From Octopus bimaculoides (Eukaryota), in NCBI RefSeq assembly GCF_001194135.2, contig NC_068987.1:6404442-6437287 (forward strand): DNA of 32,846 nucleotides, written 5' to 3'. The notes under the pieces are model-generated. The model did no database searches and had not been told where the DNA came from. It was given only the letters and a program-made list of their open reading frames with translations. The position numbers and the translations under genes are program-made. Position 1 is the stretch's first letter, and each line of letters starts with the position of its first letter. Of the stretch, positions 1,520 to 30,285 are shown one piece after another.

Positions 1520-1905
1520 CGATTCTCCCTCAACTGCTTCTCGTTCGCACGGAAGTTTTACCAACAGAGAACTCTGGAGTGGTCATAGGAACGAGAATGG
1601 GCCCCAACTTTGCGAACCTGTTCGTTGGCTGTGTTGAGGCCCGAATATTCTCACAATTCATTGGTCCCATTCCCAAGCTATACGGTCGTTATATCGATGA
1701 CTGTAGCGGCGCGACTTCACTCTCCCACGAGTATCTGGACTCTTTCCTCTCCTTTGTCCAATCATTCCATCCTGCCCTCGAATTCCCCTGCACTATTTCT
1801 AACTCTTCCGTCGAATTTCTTGACATTTCTGTCAGCATACACCGCTCCGCTCCCACCACCTCCATCCACTACAATCATACTGACATACACTTCTACCTTA
1901 ACTTT
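1520..1905 (+). pseudogene. Penelope-like element (PLE) reverse transcriptase fragment, frameshifted
   Basis: Frame from 1502 gives ...LNCFSFARKFYQQ. A frameshift near 1568-1570 then gives NSGVVIGTRMGPNFANLF...YGRYIDD...FHPALEF...SVEFLDISV...TSIHYNHTDIHFYLNF. These match the PLE RT motifs GxxMGxxxGPxxANLF, RYIDD, FLD and the YKxTDxHxYLxF-like thumb. Confidence 0.88.
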
Positions 1906-2968: not shown

Positions 2969-2981
2969 TGTAACAATTATA

Positions 2982-3337
2982 CAGTTCTATATTTAAGAGA
3001 TGAGGAATTATTTACATTATTTACATTATCTACATTTGACGGATATTCGTCCTCATCTTGTTTGTTGTTAACACAACGTTTCGGCTGATATACCCTCCAG
3101 CCTGATATATCCCCAAGGTTCCGAGTTCGATTCACGGCAGCGACCTGATTAATAATAATAATAATAATAATATAATAATAATAATAATAGTAACATCGAT
3201 AGGAATGAGAACCCAGGTTCGAAATTTCCCCAAGACACCTGACGAAGGCTGGAGGGTATATCAGCCGAAACGTTGTGTTAACAACAAACAAGATGAGGAC
3301 GAATATCCGTCAAATGTAGATAATGTAAATAATGTAA
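2982..3337. mobile_element. Fold-back copy of the tRNA-headed, hammerhead-bearing element (family H): minus-strand 3' part plus plus-strand head-to-tail part
   Basis: Perfect 92-bp inverted repeat 3012-3103 / 3246-3337. Plus arm has B box GTTCGATTC (3126-3134), (AAT)n, then the HHR. TGTAACAATTATA occurs at 2969-2981 and 3333-3345. Homologous to 23463-23779. Confidence 0.9.
3234..3279 (+). ncRNA. Minimal type I hammerhead ribozyme, intact core
   Basis: GACAC | CTGACGA | A | GGCTG-GAGGGTATAT-CAGCC | GAAA | CG-T-T | GTGTT. Helix I GACAC/GTGTT, helix II 5 bp, palindromic helix III ACGT, predicted cleavage after GUU at 3274. Confidence 0.85.
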
Positions 3338-3454
3338 CAATTATATTTTAGAGTTTAATGATTTTAATCGCTACGAAGTCACGAATTGAATTGATGTCTT
3401 ACGTCCAATCTTATCTCCATCTCACCTTCTCTCTCTCTTTTACTAATTCTCTCT

Positions 3455-4240: not shown

Positions 4241-4659
4241 TTTATCCTTTCCATTCGTTGTGTATGTATATGTATATGTATACCTATGTGTATATATGCG
4301 CATGTGTTGTATATATATATATATATAAGTGCATGTACGTTCGCGTGTATGTGTGTATATGCGTGTATGTGTGTATCTATCTTCGTTTCTCTTTTTCCCT
4401 TTCTTTTTTTCTATTCTCTATATTACAGATACACTCTAATTAATACAGCGCATAATTAATACACGCACACACATACATACACACAACACACATACATACA
4501 CACACTTATTACTATATATGTGTGTGTGTTTGTGTGTGTGTGCATGTGGGTGTATAAATTTGTATATATTTATGTCTACATAAATGTATGCAGTTGTGAT
4601 ATTTATATGTGCACGTATACAGATACAATTGTATAAATATATGTATCCTTATGTATACA

Positions 4660-8218: not shown

Positions 8219-8425
8219 AGAAGGTGGTGAGCTGGCAGAATGGTTAGCACGCCCGGTGAAACGCTTAGCGGTATTTCGCCCACCGCTACGTTCTGAGATC
8301 AAATTCCACCGAAATGAAATTTCCCTTTCATCCTTTCGACTTCGATGAAGTAAGTATCAGTCATGTACTGGGGTCGATCTAATCGACTATCACCCTCCCC
8401 TCCAATTCCAGGCCTCGTAGACAGG
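8219..8425 (+). mobile_element. SINE family A
   Basis: GGTGAGCTGGCAGAATGGTTAGCACG (A-box region), GAGATCAAATTCC (B-box-like), TTTCATCCTTTCG central domain. Confidence 0.85.
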
Positions 8426-13517: not shown

Positions 13518-13632
13518 TAAGGCGGCGAACTGGCAGAAACGTTAGCACGCCGGGCGAAATGCTTAGCGGTATTTCGTCTGTGCCTAGAGTTGAAAATAAT
13601 ATAAATTCCGCCGTGGTCGACTTTGCCTTTCT
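13518..13632 (+). mobile_element. SINE family A 5' half
   Basis: AAGGCGGCGAACTGGCAGAAACGTTAGCACGCCGGGCGAAATGCTTAGCGGTATTTCGTC...GTCGACTTTGCCTTTC. Confidence 0.9.
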
Positions 13633-13858
13633 TATTTCTTTATTGCCCACAAGGGGCTAAATATAGAGAGGACAGACAAGGACAGACAAAAGGATTAAGT
13701 CGATTAGATCGACCCTTGTGCGTTACTGGTACTTAATTTATCGACTCTGAAAGGATGAAAGGCAAAGTCTCTCGGAGAAATTCGAACTCAGAACGTAACG
13801 GCAGACGAAATACCGCGAAGCATTTCACCCGTCGTGCTAACGTTTTCAACCAGCTCAT
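13633..13858 (-). mobile_element. SINE family A, near full length, inverted relative to the previous copy
   Basis: TTCTTTATTGCCCACAAGGGGCTAAA...TGGTACTTAATTTATCGAC...GAACTCAGAACGTAACGGCAGACGAAATACCG...GTGCTAACG...CCAGCTC. Confidence 0.9.
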
Positions 13859-16124: not shown

Positions 16125-16536
16125 CTACCCATGTAGCTGTGGTAAGAAGTTTGCTTCCCATCCATATGGTTCCGAGCTCAGTCTCACTGCGTGGCACCTT
16201 GGGCGAATGTCTTCTACTTTGTGGTTGGATTTGGTTGACAGAAACTGAAAAAAGCCGCGGCGAGCTGGCAGAAACGTTAGCACGCCGGGCGAAATGCTTA
16301 GTGGTATTTCGTCTACCGCTATGTTCTGAGTTCGAATTCCGCCGAGGTCGACTTTGCCTTTCATCCTTTCGGGATCGATAAATTAAGTACCAATTACGCA
16401 CTGAGGTCGATATAATCGACTTAATCCCTTTGTCTGTCCTTGTTTGCCCCCTCTATGTTTAGCCCCTTGTGGGCAATAACGAAATAAGAATCTGAGAGAA
16501 GCCCGCTGTATATAAATATATATATCCCTGGACCTT

Positions 16537-17502: not shown

Positions 17503-18031
17503 CTCTATAGAGTGCATTCTTTTACAAACATTCAGAAAAACACCAATTTCGAATATTTTTCTAATTCTACAAGACAAAGAGAGGGGCTCTGGGAAAAGTC
17601 AGGAGTGATGACCTTGTCTAGACTAGGTCATGTACAAAAGAAAAAGAAAAAGAAAAAAGACAAAAACGTGTGTGGATGAAAGGGATGTTGTGGACATAAA
17701 CCAGGTCCCCAAATCTAGGAATTTAGGTAGTTGAGTGAAGCTGTCTATATTTTGATATAATGCAAAGTGACGAAAATTGAAAACTAACGAAGCCAAGTAA
17801 CCAAGCTTTTGAAGCGGCAAACATCAAAGGAAATCATCAAAGTTAGAGTTAAAACAAGATTAAACCAGCTGTGAAACAACTGTCAGGATTTTGGTTGTTT
17901 TTTTTTTTGGTTTTGGTTTTTGTCTTTTGACAAACCCTAAAATAAACCATGAAGTATCAATAACATCTGACTAATCAATAAATAATGCACACACACACAC
18001 ACACACTTGCACACGCATATACACTACCCTT

Positions 18032-18067
<36 letters not shown>

Positions 18068-18369
18068 CGTGTGTATATATATAGTTCATATTTATATATA
18101 TATATATATATTTATATAAACACACACACATGTACATATACACAGATATACCTATGCATATACAAACATACATATATCTATAGAAATGGGTGTGTATGTG
18201 TATGTGTGTGTGTGCGTACGTGTGTGTGTGTGTATGTGTGTGTATGTGTGTGTATGTGTGTATGCAATATAAATACAATAAACTGAAATCCCTCATGGTA
18301 TAAATATTAAATAAAATACATTTTCCTATTACCGAATCATAATTATGCTATTTGGAAAATAACATCCTA

Positions 18370-19423: not shown

Positions 19424-19457
<34 letters not shown>

Positions 19458-20004
19458 TGTATGTATGTATGTATGTATGTATAGACATAGACATACACAC
19501 ACGTATATGTATAGTTAAATAGATAATCAGAGGCGGTCAACCAGGCAGATAGATAGATAGATAGATATTGAGAGAAAAGGAAGAAAAGATCATTTACAGA
19601 AACATTAAAAATTCACCGTTCCTCATTGGATGAAGATGGATTTAACCTTTCATACATCAGTGTAGGCCGAAAGAGTAATAGTCACGTGTGTATTTCGATC
19701 TGGTACGGGATGACACATGTTGCTGTCTAATCGACATTTAAAAGTGGTCATCGATATCTATGAGCTATGTCTAACATGTTGACAATTTGTGAACTCTGAT
19801 TACCAAATCGAAATCTACAGCTAAGAAAATCGATATCTAAAGATTCCTATCAATCATATTACTGTATTTATATTGTCTACAGCTATTGCTGCCTTGTCGA
19901 TACCTGAAGCCAATTTATGAAACCGACGTCTGAAGTTTCTTCTATGTCAAGTCAACATCCAGCAACGACATTTAATCAGTTGATACAAGTCTAAGAGAGG
20001 GCTT

Positions 20005-22214: not shown

Positions 22215-22236
22215 TTTTCTTCTTCTTCTTATTCTT

Positions 22237-22301
<65 letters not shown>

Positions 22302-22480
22302 AACTCGGAATCTTGCGGTTAGTAGCCCGTGCTCTTAACCACTATGCCATATGCCCGTGGGCAATTATAGAGTGAATTTTAGGGCTTATAAATCTAATAG
22401 ATTTATAAGCCCTAAAATATTAGATTTATAAGCCCTAAAATTCACTCCATAAATGCCCACGGGCATATGGCATAGTGGTT
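22215..22480 (-). mobile_element. Family H head region (tRNA-like) with (AAT)n/(AAG)n, in head-to-head palindrome
   Basis: Minus strand GCATATGGCATAGTGGTTAAGAGCACGGGCTACTAACCGCAAGATTCCGAG. Inverted arms 22337-22399 / 22418-22480 match at 61 of 63 positions. Confidence 0.85.
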
Positions 22481-23462
22481 CTCCGAGGAAAAAGACTTCA
22501 AATAATTTATAATAGCACAGACAACGACCAATATAGATACATGCGATGTGGTATTATTCAGAAACAGGCAGTGAAATCTGACCTACAACTTCCAAATTTA
22601 TTTTATCAATGACTTGATGAACGCAGCAAAAATCTGTAAAAAATTGTTTAAAATCTTTATTTTTTAATTATTTTTTTTTTACTTTGAACAGTATTTGAAA
22701 TTGCAGCCGGAATCTAATAATACATATCATTCAAATGTAGGTGTATGTCAACATATACATACATTTAGCCAGCCATTCCATAAATACTTGCGTTGTTCAT
22801 AGAACGTTGAGAATGTTGTCAAATGAAACTGTCATTCCGACTAGGTAGGTTGCTGTACGTCATTATCATTGTTTCCAGTGGGAATATCTTCTCACAAGAA
22901 TTCGACCAAAGAGACAAAAAAAAAAAAAGAAAGAGAGAGAGAGGAGGAGCAGGAAGAGTGAGTTAGTGAAAGCGTCAGAAGAATATCAAAGTCCAACCGA
23001 TCGGTGATTCTAACTAGAAATAGCTCACCTAGCTCCTAAATGTTAAATTCTATTTTTAATTCACCTGTAGAAAATGTATTTTTTTTCACACGAAGTCATT
23101 GATTTGTTCATCAAAAAAAAAAAAAAAAACGTTTGAAACGGCTGTAGTGAATCTCAACCTATTTGTATTATTATATATACGTCTGAGGAAGTAAGATAAT
23201 AGACTCATACAAATGGGGCTCAGGTTGACTTGCTGCCCAAACTTCAGCTGGAACTGCGACTAAAAACGTAATGAGGTTATTAGCTGCCTAATAAAGATTA
23301 CCAAAAGGTAGGCTTTCAATGGAGCTGTACAGCAATAATAGTAAAATCAGGCAAAACAACTGGTATCAAGATAGATTATGGCATTTATATATTTAAATAT
23401 TGACATAACTTGAGGGTAGAAATGAATATTACAAGAGTTTAAATCACAAGAGGCCGATCAGT

Positions 23463-23662
23463 TGAGGAATTATTTACATTATTTACATTATTTACATTTG
23501 ACCGATATTTGTCCTCATCTTGTTTGTTGTCAACACAATGTTTCGGCTGATATACCTTACAGCCTTCATCAGGTGTCTTGGGGAAATTTCAAACCTGGGT
23601 TCTCATTCCTAAGATATTTTTCGATGTTGTTGTTGTTGTTGTTGTTGTTATTATTGTTATTA

Positions 23663-23697
<35 letters not shown>

Positions 23698-23779
23698 GTT
23701 ATTATTCAGGTCACTGCCTGGAATCGAACTCGGAATCTTGGGGTTAGTAGCCCGCGCTCTTAACCACTACGCCATATGC
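23463..23779 (-). mobile_element. Most complete family H copy: tRNA-derived head, (AAT)n(AAC)n, hammerhead, (ATGTAAATA)n tail
   Basis: A box TGGCGTAGTGG and B box GTTCGATTCC; HHR at 23532-23577; tail AATGTAAATAATGTAAATAATGTAAATAATTCCTCA. An inverted stub of the head end lies at 23779-23792 before a gap. Confidence 0.9.
23532..23577 (-). ncRNA. Type I hammerhead (family H) with one helix III mismatch
   Basis: GACAC CTGATGA A GGCTG-TAAGGTATAT-CAGCC GAAAC AT T GTGTT. ACGT is replaced by ACAT, consistent with CpG decay. Confidence 0.75.
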
Positions 23780-24709
23780 AGTGACCTGAATANNNNNNNN
23801 NNNNNNNNNNNNNNNNNNNNNNNNNNNNNNNNNNNNNNNNNNNNNNNNNNNNNNNNNNNNNNNNNNNNNNNNNNNNNNNNNNNNNNNNNNNNNNNNNNNN
23901 NNNNNNNNNNNNNNNNNNNNNNNNNNNNNNNNNNNNNNNNNNNNNNNNNNNNNNNNNNNNNNNNNNNNNNNNNNNNNNNNNNNNNNNNNNNNNNNNNNNN
24001 NNNNNNNNNNNNNNNNNNNNNNNNNNNNNNNNNNNNNNNNNNNNNNNNNNNNNNNNNNNNNNNNNNNNNNNNNNNNNNNNNNNNNNNNNNNNNNNNNNNN
24101 NNNNNNNNNNNNNNNNNNNNNNNNNNNNNNNNNNNNNNNNNNNNNNNNNNNNNNNNNNNNNNNNNNNNNNNNNNNNNNNNNNNNNNNNNNNNNNNNNNNN
24201 NNNNNNNNNNNNNNNNNNNNNNNNNNNNNNNNNNNNNNNNNNNNNNNNNNNNNNNNNNNNNNNNNNNNNNNNNNNNNNNNNNNNNNNNNNNNNNNNNNNN
24301 NNNNNNNNNNNNNNNNNNNNNNNNNNNNNNNNNNNNNNNNNNNNNNNNNNNNNNNNNNNNNNNNNNNNNNNNNNNNNNNNNNNNNNNNNNNNNNNNNNNN
24401 NNNNNNNNNNNNNNNNNNNNNNNNNNNNNNNNNNNNNNNNNNNNNNNNNNNNNNNNNNNNNNNNNNNNNNNNNNNNNNNNNNNNNNNNNNNNNNNNNNNN
24501 NNNNNNNNNNNNNNNNNNNNNNNNNNNNNNNNNNNNNNNNNNNNNNNNNNNNNNNNNNNNNNNNNNNNNNNNNNNNNNNNNNNNNNNNNNNNNNNNNNNN
24601 NNNNNNNNNNNNNNNNNNNNNNNNNNNNNNNNNNNNNNNNNNNNNNNNNNNNNNNNNNNNNNNNNNNNNNNNNNNNNNNNNNNNNNNNNNNNNNNNNNNN
24701 NNNNNNNNN

Positions 24710-26371: not shown

Positions 26372-26590
26372 TTTCTAATTTTGGCACAAGGCCAGCAATT
26401 TTGAAGGGTTGGTGTAAGTCGGTTATATCGATCCCCAATGCTCAACTGGTACTTATTGCATCGACCCCGAAAGAATGAAAGGCAAAAATCTACCTTGGTG
26501 GAATTTGAACTCAGATCGCACAGAGTGCGAAGAAATGCCGCCAAGCATTCCGTCTGAGTCGCTAACAATACTACCAGCTCGCTACCTTAA
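26372..26590 (-). mobile_element. SINE family A-related copy
   Basis: TTGGCACAAGGCCAGCAATTTT...CTGGTACTTATTGCATCGACCCCGAAAGAATGAAAGGCAAA...ATTTGAACTCAGA...CCAGCTCGC. Confidence 0.75.
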
Positions 26591-28374: not shown

Positions 28375-28590
28375 TTTATTCAAGGCCCAAGGCGGCGAGC
28401 TGGCAGAATCGTTAGCACGCCGGGCGAAATGCTTAGTGGTGTTTGTCTATCTTTACGTTCTGAGTTCAAATTTAGCCAAGGTCGACTTTGACTTTCATCC
28501 TTTCGGAGTCGATAAATTAAGTACCAGTTGCATACTGGGGTCGATGTAATCGACTGTCCCCCCTTCCACCAAATTTCGGGCCTTTTATAT
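28375..28590 (+). mobile_element. SINE family A, tandem to the previous copy
   Basis: AAGGCGGCGAGCTGGCAGAATCGTTAGC...GTCGACTTTGACTTTCATCCTTTCGGAGTCGATAAATTAAGTACCAG. Confidence 0.9.
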
Positions 28591-29875: not shown

Positions 29876-29989
29876 AATGAGATGTTAATAACGACCACGG
29901 CAACAGTAGTAACAACAGCAATAATATCAACAAAAACAACAAAAACAACAACAACAACAACAACAACATCGATAGCAAGAACAACAACA

Positions 29990-30285
29990 TTTAAGGCAGG
30001 GAACTGGCAGACTCGTCAGCACACCGGACAAAACGCTTAGTGGTTTTTTCTTTCGGCTTTACGTCCTAAGTTTCAAATTCCGCTCAGGTCAACTTTGCAT
30101 TTCGTCTTTTCGAGGTCGATAAGTACCAGCTATAAACTGGGGTCGATGTAATCAACTAGACTCGCCTCCAAAATTTCAGGCCTTGTGCCTATAGTAGAAA
30201 GGATTATCGGACGAAATGCTTAGTGGATCAAATTCTGCTGAGGTCAACTTTGCCTTTCATCATTGTGGGGTCGATAAAATGAAAA
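29990..30285 (+). mobile_element. SINE family A copy plus a partial tandem copy
   Basis: AAGGCAGGGAACTGGCAGACTCGTCAGCAC...TTTCAAATTCCGC...GGGGTCGATGTAATC; second partial copy at about 30210-30285. Confidence 0.75.

What the first reader, a model, noticed from the sequence alone, without database searches (positions are those of the whole stretch)
23463..23792. Candidate new element class: tRNA-headed SINE carrying a hammerhead ribozyme tail (family H)
Seen: one element joins a tRNA-like Pol III head (A box TGGCGTAGTGG, B box GTTCGATTCC), an (AAT/AAC)n tract, a type I hammerhead (23532-23577) and an (ATGTAAATA)n tail. The same architecture occurs at 3111-3337, and the head recurs at 22215-22480. 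Known: SINEs normally borrow a LINE 3' tail; minimal type I HHRs with palindromic helix III are typical of Penelope-like terminal repeats and retrozymes; tRNA-derived SINEs are described from octopus. Inference: this is a chimeric non-autonomous retroelement that is Pol III-transcribed, processed by self-cleavage and possibly mobilised by a PLE RT. I do not know of this combination being described, but cannot check the literature here.
Basis: partly seen in the sequence, partly recalled or inferred. Interest (0 to 1): 0.9.

Follow-up and report, generated by a model that had tools for sequence, protein, structure and literature searches.

The report
Octopus SINE with Penelope-type hammerhead tail
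This is a real short repeat family from an octopus-type genome that joins a tRNA-like RNA polymerase III promoter to a tail carrying the minimal hammerhead ribozyme motif of Penelope-like retrotransposons; it was probably copied by Penelope enzymes, which makes it a new variant of known element types rather than a new class.

Summary
Family H is a ~330-bp element. It has a head with a perfect A box and a 10/11 B box closed by a 15-bp stem, then (AAT/AAC)n, a unique 3' module with a hammerhead core, and (ATGTAAATA)2-3.

Head, tract and tail are collinear in two independent window copies: H1, and H2, which is 5'-truncated. Tract plus tail recur in one Logan contig. An Octopus bimaculoides UniRef ORF matches the tail.

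Rfam finds no hammerhead. However, the motif meets the published hallmarks of the Penelope-like-element (PLE) minimal hammerhead:
- an unpaired base between A9 and G10.1;
- a G10.1-C11.1 pair;
- a 5-bp helix I;
- a loop-less palindromic ACGU helix III.

My descriptor hits once in the window and never in 1000 shuffles. Rfam also misses a PLE hammerhead used as a control.

H2 abuts a 100%-identical inverted 5'-truncated copy, and the pair is flanked by a 13-nt direct repeat. That is the PLE insertion signature, not a LINE one.

Best reading: a Pol III SINE that uses PLE machinery. It is not a new class. Schistosoma Sm-alpha/Sj-alpha and PLE-derived retrozymes are precedents. Self-cleavage is untested, and cleavage of a monomer would separate head from tail.

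The parts
23461..23792 (-). H1: the most complete family-H copy (head, microsatellite, linker, hammerhead module, 9-mer repeats, terminal ATTCCTCAAC). Its 5' flank is lost in the N gap 23793-24709.
23778..23792 (-). 5' arm TATTCAGGTCACTGC of a 15-bp stem that closes the tRNA-like head
   Evidence: arms 23703-23717 and 23778-23792, 100% complementary, 60 nt apart
23764..23774 (-). Pol III A box TGGCGTAGTGG (perfect match to TRGCNNAGTGG)
23720..23730 (-). Pol III B box AGTTCGATTCC (10/11 to GGTTCGANNCC), 33 nt after the A box
23703..23717 (-). 3' arm GCAGTGACCTGAATA of the head-closing stem
23626..23702 (-). Internal (AAT)n(AAC)n microsatellite
23578..23625 (-). Unique linker ATCGAAAAATATCTTAGGAATGAGAACCCAGGTTTGAAATTTCCCCAA. 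It has the same 5' boundary against the microsatellite in H1, H2 and L002.
23532..23577 (-). Minimal type I hammerhead-like motif GACAC-CUGAUGA-A-GGCUG(N10)CAGCC-GAA-ACAU-U|GUGUU. Helix III is broken by a CpG-to-CpA change. The predicted cleavage site is between 23537 and 23536.
23471..23497 (-). (ATGTAAATA)3 tandem 9-mers
23461..23470 (-). Terminal ATTCCTCAAC, shared with H2inv (ATTCCTCATC)
3108..3337 (+). H2: 5'-truncated copy starting at head position 47. It has the B box at 3124-3134, the 3' arm at 3137-3149, (AAT)n at about 3150-3189, the linker at 3190-3233, then hammerhead and 9-mers. It is the least CpG-decayed copy.
3234..3279 (+). Intact minimal hammerhead GACAC-CUGACGA-A-GGCUG(N10)CAGCC-GAA-ACGU-U|GUGUU. 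It is the only descriptor hit in the window. The predicted cleavage site is between 3274 and 3275.
2982..3103 (-). H2inv: inverted 5'-truncated copy that starts inside the hammerhead at helix II. It is 100% identical to H2 over 92 nt and joined head-to-head to H2. It carries a ~27-nt 3' extension (ATTCCTCATCTCTTAAATATAGAACTG) that H2 lacks.
2969..2981 (+). Left copy of the 13-nt direct repeat TGTAACAATTATA; candidate target-site duplication of the H2inv+H2 unit
   Evidence: only two matches in the window; 0.18 expected at up to 1 mismatch
3333..3345 (+). Right copy of the 13-nt direct repeat. It overlaps the last TGTAA of H2's 9-mer tail.
22220..22370 (-). H3: related head (A box TGGCATAGTGG, decayed B box) followed by (AAT)n(AAG)n only. 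It has no hammerhead tail and a different 5' leader.
1523..1899 (+). Relic of a Penelope-like-element reverse transcriptase (YIDD region), 1.1 kb from H2inv and not contiguous with it
   Evidence: (tblastn to the L003 RT: 59% identity, E 1.7e-24)

Best explanation
Family H is a short non-autonomous retroposon of an octopus genome. It is built from two modules.

**Module 1, the head (structure shown, function inferred).** It is a tRNA-like sequence with intact A and B boxes, closed by a 15-bp stem. I infer that it acts as an internal RNA polymerase III promoter. The sense strand has no T4 terminator, so a Pol III transcript could run through the (AAT/AAC)n tract and the whole tail and stop at T-runs in the flank.

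**Module 2, the tail (structure shown).** It is a ~170-nt 3' module containing a loop-less type I minimal hammerhead of exactly the kind found in the pseudo-LTRs of Penelope-like elements. It ends in (ATGTAAATA)2-3 plus ATTCCTCANC.

**Mobilisation (inferred).** This 3' module was taken from, or mimics, the 3' end of an octopus PLE. It is the handle by which a PLE RT/GIY-YIG endonuclease copies the Pol III transcript into new sites. The H2 locus fits this. It is a 5'-truncated copy joined at its 5' end to an identical inverted 5'-truncated copy. One arm has a ~27-nt extension, and a 13-nt direct repeat flanks the pair.

**Role of the hammerhead (inferred, weakest step).** As a monomer it cannot close helix III, so single transcripts stay intact. 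Cleavage, if it occurs at all, needs two copies pairing through the ACGU palindrome. The motif may be kept mainly because the PLE machinery or the PLE life cycle requires it. Old copies lose it through CpG decay.
For: **Architecture recurs.**
- H1 and H2 are collinear from the head through the microsatellite and linker to the tail.
- The linker starts at the same boundary in H1, H2 and L002.
- A translated-tail search hit an O. bimaculoides UniRef ORF and a Logan contig that carries (AAT)n plus the tail.

**Head.** The A box is perfect, the B box is 10/11, the gap is 33 nt, and the sense strand has no TTTT.

**Hammerhead.**
- H2 has the full core, a 5-bp helix I, helix II GGCUG/CAGCC, an extra A between A9 and G10.1, a G10.1-C11.1 pair and a palindromic ACGU with no loop 3. 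These are the hallmarks listed by Cervera & de la Pena 2014 (PMC4209133).
- My descriptor gives 1 hit in the window and 0 in 1000 shuffles.
- Helices I and II appear in the minimum-free-energy fold.
- Between H1 and H2 there are 0 changes at 33 constrained positions and 3 at 11 free ones (N7 and loop 2).

**Control.** A PLE from another organism (L003: RVT_1 match below the Pfam cut-off, E 4e-4, plus a GIY-YIG domain above cut-off) carries GAC-CUGAUGA-U-GGUGUC..GACACC-GAAACGUU|GUC 860 nt after its ORF. This is the same layout, and Rfam misses it too.

**PLE-type insertion.**
- The inverted arms 3012-3103 and 3246-3337 are 92 nt long and 100% complementary.
- The 13-nt flanking direct repeat occurs only twice in the window.
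- Craig et al. [quoted passage not shown]

**PLEs in this genome.** There is an RT relic at 1523-1899, and PLE families are reported as recently active in O. vulgaris (PMC13282606).
Against: - No Rfam hammerhead hit at any threshold.
- Only one of the three window tails passes the descriptor. H1 has ACAU, and H2inv is cut inside the motif. The Logan copy L002 has ACAU plus two core or helix changes.
- Fold energies are only about 1.7 sd below shuffles.
- Only three or four copies could be obtained. Conservation statistics are therefore weak, and L002 shows 5/33 changes at constrained positions.
- No octopus PLE 3' end could be fetched, so homology between the tail and a partner PLE is not shown.
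- Short tandem 3' repeats such as (ATGTAAATA)n are also typical of the tails of CR1/L2/RTE-type LINE partners (my own knowledge).
- tRNA ancestry is not significant: ARAGORN finds none, and the best Rfam match is tRNA-Sec at 14.7 bits, E 3.4.
- The perfect inverted pair sits in a gap-rich short-read-style scaffold and could be an assembly or replication artefact.
- The UniRef ORF matches H2inv's '3' extension' and even part of the putative target-site duplication (SSSLKYRT-I/V-stop). The boundary of the element is therefore uncertain.
Confidence: 0.55

Rival explanations
1. Family H is an ordinary tRNA-derived SINE mobilised by a LINE. The tail is a LINE 3' end with short tandem repeats. The hammerhead-like motif is a fortuitous or long-dead similarity with no role.
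For: No Rfam hammerhead hit. The fold z-scores are weak. The motif is decayed in H1 and L002. 3' tandem short repeats are typical of stringent LINE partners (my own knowledge). Octopus genomes are rich in LINEs and SINEs (PMC13282606).
Against: The descriptor hit 0 of 1000 shuffles. The motif also shows four features that were not required to spot a CUGANGA/GAAA core: the extra base after A9, G10.1-C11.1, a 5-bp helix I and palindromic ACGU. All four are PLE-specific. The H2inv/H2 structure has two outward-facing 3' ends. That is not the twin-priming 5' inversion of LINEs but matches PLE insertions. Rfam also misses the control PLE hammerhead.
Confidence: 0.15
2. Family H is not one element but a recurrent nesting. 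In this reading a short PLE-derived hammerhead element, or a truncated pLTR, repeatedly inserts next to the (AAT)n tail of a simple tRNA-SINE such as H3. PLE endonucleases are known to prefer microsatellites.
For: H3 shows that the same head can end in (AAT)n(AAG)n with no hammerhead tail. PLEs have an insertion bias for microsatellites (PMC8557442). Most minimal hammerheads in animal genomes are solitary and dispersed (PMC4209133).
Against: No microsatellite remains 3' of the tail in H1, H2, H2inv or L002. Every insertion would therefore have had to land exactly at the repeat's end. The tail's 5' boundary is the same in three copies. At the H2 locus the truncation point joined to the identical inverted copy lies inside the head (position 47). 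This implies that head, microsatellite and tail were copied as one RNA.
Confidence: 0.12
3. Family H is a retrozyme-like element. In this reading tandem or dimeric transcripts self-cleave at the hammerhead, are ligated into small circular RNAs by a tRNA ligase, and the circles are the template for PLE reverse transcription. The tRNA-like head then serves RNA stability or ligase recruitment rather than transcription.
For: Metazoan non-LTR retrozymes use type I hammerheads with weak helix III and are thought to depend on PLEs (PMC7229834, PMC7761336, 10.64898/2026.07.22.740005). The 15-bp stem closing the head gives a compact, highly paired domain.
Against: The window has no direct tandem copies. 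There is one hammerhead per unit, and the only paired arrangement is inverted with one hammerhead truncated. The motif lacks the loop-loop contacts of retrozyme hammerheads. The intact A and B boxes at canonical spacing argue for a promoter role.
Confidence: 0.08

Closest known systems
Sm-alpha / Sj-alpha SINE-like retroposons of Schistosoma (Ferbeyre et al. 1998; Laha et al. 2000; summarised in PMC2770079 and PMC6765202)
   Same: They are short, dispersed and non-coding. They have a tRNA-derived head with a Pol III promoter followed by a type I hammerhead. This is the same two-module logic, so the combination itself is not new.
   Different: Their hammerhead is the canonical form with loop-loop contacts. 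It is recognised by Rfam-type searches and active in vitro. Here it is the loop-less PLE minimal form that Rfam does not see. The host phylum differs (Platyhelminthes versus Mollusca), and sequence homology was not tested. Family H also has an internal (AAT/AAC)n tract, a 9-mer repeat tail and a PLE-style inverted insertion.
Minimal hammerheads in the pseudo-LTRs of Penelope-like elements (Cervera & de la Pena 2014, PMC4209133; Lunse et al. 2017)
   Same: The core is the same. So are the unpaired base between A9 and 10.1, the G10.1-C11.1 pair, the 4-5 bp helix I, and the palindromic 15.2-16.2 with no loop 3, which predicts dimer-only activity. The control PLE L003 shares the GAAACGUU| layout.
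   Different: The motif is not inside a PLE pLTR next to an RT/EN ORF. It sits in the tail of a 330-bp element headed by Pol III boxes. Helix II is 5 bp (6 with a G-U pair), compared with 6-8 bp reported for PLEs.
Metazoan non-LTR retrozymes (Cervera & de la Pena 2020, PMC7229834; Li et al. 2026 preprint 10.64898/2026.07.22.740005)
   Same: They are non-autonomous, carry a hammerhead, are probably PLE-dependent and are of similar size (170-400 nt).
   Different: Retrozymes are tandem repeats expressed as circular RNAs, with fuller hammerheads and no Pol III head. Family H copies here are solitary or inverted, with a tRNA-like head.
tRNA-derived SINEs of octopus (OR1, OR2, OK; Ohshima & Okada 1994) and other cephalopod SINE superfamilies
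   Same: They have the same host group, a tRNA-type head and a comparable size.
   Different: I could not obtain their sequences, so identity with family H is untested. OR1 is described as a CORE-SINE (PMC4824008). None of the papers I could search mentions a hammerhead in them.
Non-autonomous PLE derivatives such as MRC1/Chlamys in Chlamydomonas (Craig et al. 2021, PMC8557442)
   Same: They are short elements that share a 3' end with autonomous PLEs and show PLE insertion structures (pLTRs, inverted copies).
   Different: They have no Pol III head and mostly no hammerhead, and they occur in a different kingdom.

Membership tests
Hammerhead ribozyme, canonical type I (Rfam Hammerhead_1 and relatives) | Conserved core CUGANGA ... 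GAAA with H17 at the cleavage site | tested here: met
   H1 has CUGAUGA/GAAA/U17 and H2 has CUGACGA/GAAA/U17
Hammerhead ribozyme, canonical type I (Rfam Hammerhead_1 and relatives) | Three closed helices around the core, including a helix III hairpin | tested here: not met
   Helices I (5 bp) and II (5-6 bp) form. Helix III has no loop: it is only ACGU in H2 and ACAU in H1.
Hammerhead ribozyme, canonical type I (Rfam Hammerhead_1 and relatives) | Match to a curated covariance model | tested here: not met
   No hammerhead family hit at gathering score or at E<=10. The control PLE hammerhead is also missed, so this test has little power for minimal forms.
Hammerhead ribozyme, canonical type I (Rfam Hammerhead_1 and relatives) | Self-cleavage at the predicted site | not testable with these tools
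   Needs in vitro transcription of monomer and dimer constructs.
PLE-type minimal hammerhead (min-HHR, PMC4209133) | Unpaired nucleotide between A9 and 10.1 | tested here: met
   The extra A is present in H1, H2 and L002
PLE-type minimal hammerhead (min-HHR, PMC4209133) | G10.1-C11.1 closing pair of helix II | tested here: met
   GGCUG...CAGCC in H1 and H2
PLE-type minimal hammerhead (min-HHR, PMC4209133) | Palindromic 15.2-16.2 without loop 3 (dimer-forming helix III) | tested here: met
   H2 and H2inv have GAA-ACGU-U. H1 and L002 have ACAU, a CpG-to-CpA change.
PLE-type minimal hammerhead (min-HHR, PMC4209133) | Short helix I (4-5 bp) and enlarged helix II (6-8 bp) | tested here: inconclusive
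   Helix I is 5 bp, which meets the criterion. Helix II is 5 bp, or 6 with a G-U pair in H2, which is at the low edge.
PLE-type minimal hammerhead (min-HHR, PMC4209133) | Location in the pseudo-LTR of an RT/GIY-YIG element | tested here: not met
   No RT/EN ORF adjoins H1 or H2. The only PLE RT relic (1523-1899) is 1.1 kb away, and no PLE coding similarity lies between them.
tRNA-derived SINE | Internal Pol III A and B boxes at tRNA-like spacing | tested here: met
   The A box is perfect, the B box is 10/11, and the gap is 33 nt
tRNA-derived SINE | Recognisable homology to a tRNA cloverleaf | tested here: inconclusive
   ARAGORN finds none. The best Rfam match is tRNA-Sec at 14.7 bits, E 3.4.
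tRNA-derived SINE | Short, non-coding, multiple dispersed copies with the same architecture | tested here: met
   The element is 330 bp. H1 and H2 lie 20 kb apart at 78% identity, and there is also L002 and an O. bimaculoides ORF. The genome-wide copy number is unknown.
tRNA-derived SINE | 3' tail shared with an autonomous partner element | not testable with these tools
   No octopus LINE or PLE consensus library or genome was available. The scans of other collections were empty.
tRNA-derived SINE | Target-site duplications | tested here: inconclusive
   A 13-nt direct repeat flanks H2inv+H2, but part of it may belong to the element. The 5' flank of H1 lies in an N gap.
PLE-mobilised element (insertion signature, PMC8557442) | [quoted passage not shown] | tested here: met
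   The H2 locus has 92-nt arms at 100% identity, and one arm carries a ~27-nt extension. This is a single locus. H1 cannot be tested because of the gap.
Metazoan non-LTR retrozyme | Head-to-tail tandem units, each with a hammerhead | tested here: not met
   There are only three tail copies in the window and none is in direct tandem
Sm-alpha/Sj-alpha family | Sequence homology to the schistosome elements | not tested
The resemblance is architectural only.

The most novel reading that the evidence does not exclude
Family H is the first recognised Pol III-driven, tRNA-headed SINE whose partner is a Penelope-like element rather than a LINE. The PLE minimal hammerhead would serve as part of the 3' recognition and processing module. 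SINE-type parasitism would then have evolved on a third retrotransposon class, leaving PLE-style inverted insertions across cephalopod genomes.
Probability: 0.45. Interest if true: 0.65.

Novelty: new variant of a known kind. Interest (0 to 1): 0.5.

Why it matters
SINEs are defined in textbooks and in classification schemes such as SINEBase, Dfam and Repbase by a small-RNA head plus a LINE-derived tail. A SINE that rides on Penelope-like elements would add a new partnership type. It would help explain the thousands of solitary minimal hammerheads scattered in invertebrate genomes. It would also give a compact natural substrate (about 330 nt, with a defined 3' module) for asking what PLE reverse transcriptases recognise and what the PLE hammerhead is for. 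For octopus genomics, SINEs are about 8-12% of the genome and most are unclassified, so this would give one family a mechanism. It does not change the picture of ribozyme biology, because SINE-borne and PLE-linked hammerheads are both already known.

Tried and rejected
- **Rfam** at gathering score and at E<=10, on the whole window and on ~350-nt slices, gave no hammerhead. The many mir-297/mir-3149-type sub-threshold hits are TG/TA microsatellites.
- **ARAGORN** found no tRNA.
- **Collection scans.** The hammerhead pattern in viral contigs gave 0 hits. The tail 20-mer in metagenome contigs gave one chance hit in a bacterial ABC-transporter gene.
- **Copies via translated ORFs.** The sense-frame tail peptide gave only 2 hits: one O. 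bimaculoides UniRef ORF with no contig on record, and one Logan contig. The antisense frame gave nothing. A real multi-copy conservation or covariation test was therefore impossible.
- **Pfam and PDB** on the window's RT fragment gave no hit. Its PLE identity came only from homologues.
- **Literature.** Searching for the sequence words themselves gave 0 papers. No paper combined hammerhead, SINE and octopus in a relevant way.
- **Thermodynamic signal.** Fold z-scores are about -1.7, the same as for the control PLE hammerhead, so they do not discriminate.
- **Rejected: H2's tail is the 3' end of the PLE relic at 1523-1899.** H2 carries part of the tRNA-like head and (AAT)n. No PLE coding similarity or second hammerhead lies between them.
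- **Rejected: L1-type twin priming for the inverted pair.** Both arms contain the element's 3' end.
Full report
**Source and setting.** The window is AT-rich (38% GC). It has 13 N gaps and is saturated with microsatellites and short repeats. A translated search with the element's tail hit a UniRef entry from Octopus bimaculoides at 80% identity. The family therefore belongs to an octopus genome.

**What is there.** On the minus strand, H1 (23461-23792) reads in this order:
- a 15-nt arm;
- a tRNA-like segment with a perfect A box (TGGCGTAGTGG, 23764-23774) and a 10/11 B box (AGTTCGATTCC, 23720-23730), 33 nt apart;
- the complementary 15-nt arm (arms 100% complementary);
- an (AAT)n(AAC)n tract;
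- a 48-nt unique linker;
- the hammerhead-like motif at exactly 23532-23577;
- a 34-nt spacer;
- (ATGTAAATA)3;
- ATTCCTCAAC.

The sense strand has no TTTT, so a Pol III transcript could traverse it. The 5' flank is lost in the gap 23793-24709.

H2 (3108-3337, +) is collinear with H1 positions 47-319 at 78% identity. It has the B box, the 3' arm, (AAT)n, the linker, the hammerhead and the 9-mers, but is 5'-truncated and lacks the A box. A Logan contig (L002) carries (AAT)n, the same linker boundary and the tail. Three independent copies thus share the microsatellite-linker-tail order, and two of them carry the head in front of it. Chance adjacency of head and tail is excluded on this small sample.

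H3 (22220-22370, -) has the same head core but a different leader. It ends in (AAT)n(AAG)n without the tail. Its 5' end lies in a 63-nt inverted duplication.

**Is the hammerhead real?** Rfam gives no hammerhead match at gathering score, nor at E<=10 in ~350-nt slices.

Read by hand, H2 is GACAC-CUGACGA-A-GGCUG(N10)CAGCC-GAA-ACGU-U|GUGUU. It has the complete core, a 5-bp helix I, a 5-bp helix II (6 bp with a G-U pair), one unpaired A between A9 and G10.1, and an ACGU helix III with no loop.

Cervera & de la Pena (2014, PMC4209133) defined the Penelope-like-element 'min-HHR' by these traits:
- helix I of 4-5 bp;
- a conserved G10.1-C11.1 pair;
- palindromic 15.2-16.2 with no loop 3, which implies action as dimers.

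I coded a descriptor after theirs. It hits the window once, at H2, and hits none of 1000 dinucleotide shuffles on both strands. Helices I and II are in the minimum-free-energy fold, although the energies are only about 1.7 sd below shuffles.

**A control came from the window itself.** An ORF fragment at 1523-1899 (+) is homologous to reverse transcriptases found by protein search. One homologue sits on a 578-kb ENA contig (L003). A GIY-YIG endonuclease domain follows it (Pfam 23.6 bits against a cut-off of 22.6; the RT's own RVT_1 match is below the Pfam cut-off, 20.6 against 29.6 bits, E 4e-4). On that basis I read L003 as a PLE.

About 860 nt downstream of that ORF my descriptor finds GAC-CUGAUGA-U-GGUGUC(N5)GACACC-GAA-ACGU-U|GUC. 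It has the same extra base, the same G-C closing pair and the same GAAACGUU| layout as H2. Rfam misses this PLE hammerhead too, and its fold z-score is similar at -1.9. The Rfam negative therefore does not count against the motif. Family H's motif is a match to the PLE minimal type.

**Conservation.** H2 keeps CpGs where H1 and L002 have TpG or CpA. This holds for N7 of the CUGANGA box, for helix III, and for two sites in the tail. H2 is therefore the least decayed copy, and the ancestral motif was CUGACGA...ACGU.

Between H1 and H2 there are no differences at the 33 constrained hammerhead positions. There are three at the 11 free positions (N7 and loop 2), plus the CpG change in helix III. 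The clean flanks differ at about 6%. This is what constraint in the master copy would give, but with two sequences P is only about 0.05. The older L002 copy has 5/33 changes, including G5 to A. No more copies could be obtained, so this test remains underpowered.

**How it was inserted.** At the H2 locus, the 5'-truncated H2 is joined at its 5' end to an inverted, more severely 5'-truncated copy, H2inv (2982-3103, -). H2inv starts inside the hammerhead. The arms 3012-3103 and 3246-3337 are 92 nt long and 100% complementary. H1 differs from them by 7%, so the two arms arose in one event.

H2inv carries a ~27-nt extension beyond the 9-mers that H2 lacks. The pair is flanked by the 13-nt direct repeat TGTAACAATTATA at 2969-2981 and 3333-3345. 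These are the only two matches in the window, against 0.18 expected.

Both arms contain the element's 3' end, so this is not LINE twin priming. It matches the PLE insertion signature described by Craig et al. [quoted passage not shown] They also report non-autonomous elements that share the 3' ends of autonomous PLEs. Cervera & de la Pena likewise noted dual minimal hammerheads 100-700 bp apart on opposite strands.

There are three caveats. This is one locus. It lies in a gap-rich scaffold. The O. bimaculoides ORF matches the extension and even the first bases of the putative target-site duplication, so the exact 3' boundary is uncertain.

**Mechanism.**
- *Shown:* a Pol III-type head, a PLE-type minimal hammerhead in the tail, recurrence of the whole architecture, and one PLE-style insertion.
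- *Inferred:* transcription from the A and B boxes; recognition of the 3' module by a PLE RT/EN; and integration with PLE-typical truncation and inversion.

The hammerhead's role is the weakest step. Without a closed helix III it should be inactive in a single transcript. Cleavage at GUU|G would in any case separate the promoter head from the last ~75 nt. It may be retained because the partner PLE's machinery or life cycle needs it, and it would act only when two copies pair through ACGU.

**Comparison with what is known.** The combination is not a new class.
- Schistosoma Sm-alpha/Sj-alpha are tRNA-derived, Pol III-transcribed SINE-like retroposons with an active hammerhead (PMC2770079, PMC6765202).
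- Metazoan retrozymes are hammerhead-bearing, probably PLE-dependent non-autonomous elements (PMC7229834, PMC7761336). A 2026 preprint derives them from PLE pLTRs.

Family H differs from Sm-alpha in carrying the PLE minimal hammerhead rather than the canonical one. It differs from retrozymes in having a Pol III head and being solitary rather than tandem.

I found no description of such an element, or of any SINE-PLE partnership, in the searchable literature. I could not consult Repbase, Dfam, SINEBase or the 1994 octopus SINE paper.

**Verdict.** I rate it a new variant of a known kind, with moderate interest.

Noticed in passing
window 1523-1899 (+): A relic of a Penelope-like-element reverse transcriptase (FYQQ...MG...ANLF...YGRYIDDC...FLD...HYNHTD). 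It is cut off by a microsatellite at about 1900. Pfam and PDB searches gave nothing; it was identified only through homologues, one of which (L003) is followed by a GIY-YIG domain.
   Followed up: yes
L003 8796-8834 (+), ENA contig ctg154816 of ERZ25073780: A PLE from an unidentified eukaryote (RVT_1 match below the Pfam cut-off, plus a GIY-YIG domain) has a minimal hammerhead GAC-CUGAUGA-U-GGUGUC..GACACC-GAAACGUU|GUC about 860 nt after its ORF. Rfam does not detect it. It is a useful positive control for minimal-hammerhead searches.
   Followed up: partly
window 22337-22399 and 22418-22480: The 5' part of the H3 head and its leader lie in a 63-nt, 97% inverted duplication around an inner perfect 21-nt palindrome. 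This is a fold-back at the 5' end of the element. It may come from snap-back synthesis or be a separate palindromic element.
   Followed up: partly
window 29985-30200, 28389-28584, 16262-16421, 8221-8418, 13518-13637, 26372-26509 and others: A second, unrelated and much more abundant SINE-like family with at least 10 copies or fragments in 33 kb. It contains ...GCTTAGTGG...GTTTCAAATTCCGC...GGTCGATAAGTACCAG. One copy directly follows an (AAC)n-ATCGATAG junction that resembles the family-H microsatellite-linker boundary.
   Followed up: partly
window 2969-2981 and 3333-3345 (+): An exact 13-nt direct repeat TGTAACAATTATA brackets the inverted H2inv/H2 pair and is a candidate target-site duplication. 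The left copy also sits in a small hairpin (ACTGTA...TACAGT).
   Followed up: partly
window 3190-3337 versus 23461-23625 and L002 1-190: H2 keeps CpGs at four positions where the other copies have TpG or CpA. This suggests methylation-driven decay of older copies and marks H2 as the youngest.
   Followed up: partly
whole window (e.g. 4469-4553, 17987-18068, 19445-19517): About 190 sub-threshold Rfam 'microRNA' matches (mir-297, mir-3149, mir-466, mir-1277). All lie on TG/TA/CA microsatellites and are far below gathering scores. They are artefacts of low-complexity hairpins.
   Followed up: no
window 23793-24709 and 12 other N runs: Assembly gaps often abut microsatellites or repeat ends. H1's head runs straight into a 917-N gap, so an inverted partner copy there cannot be excluded.
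   Followed up: no
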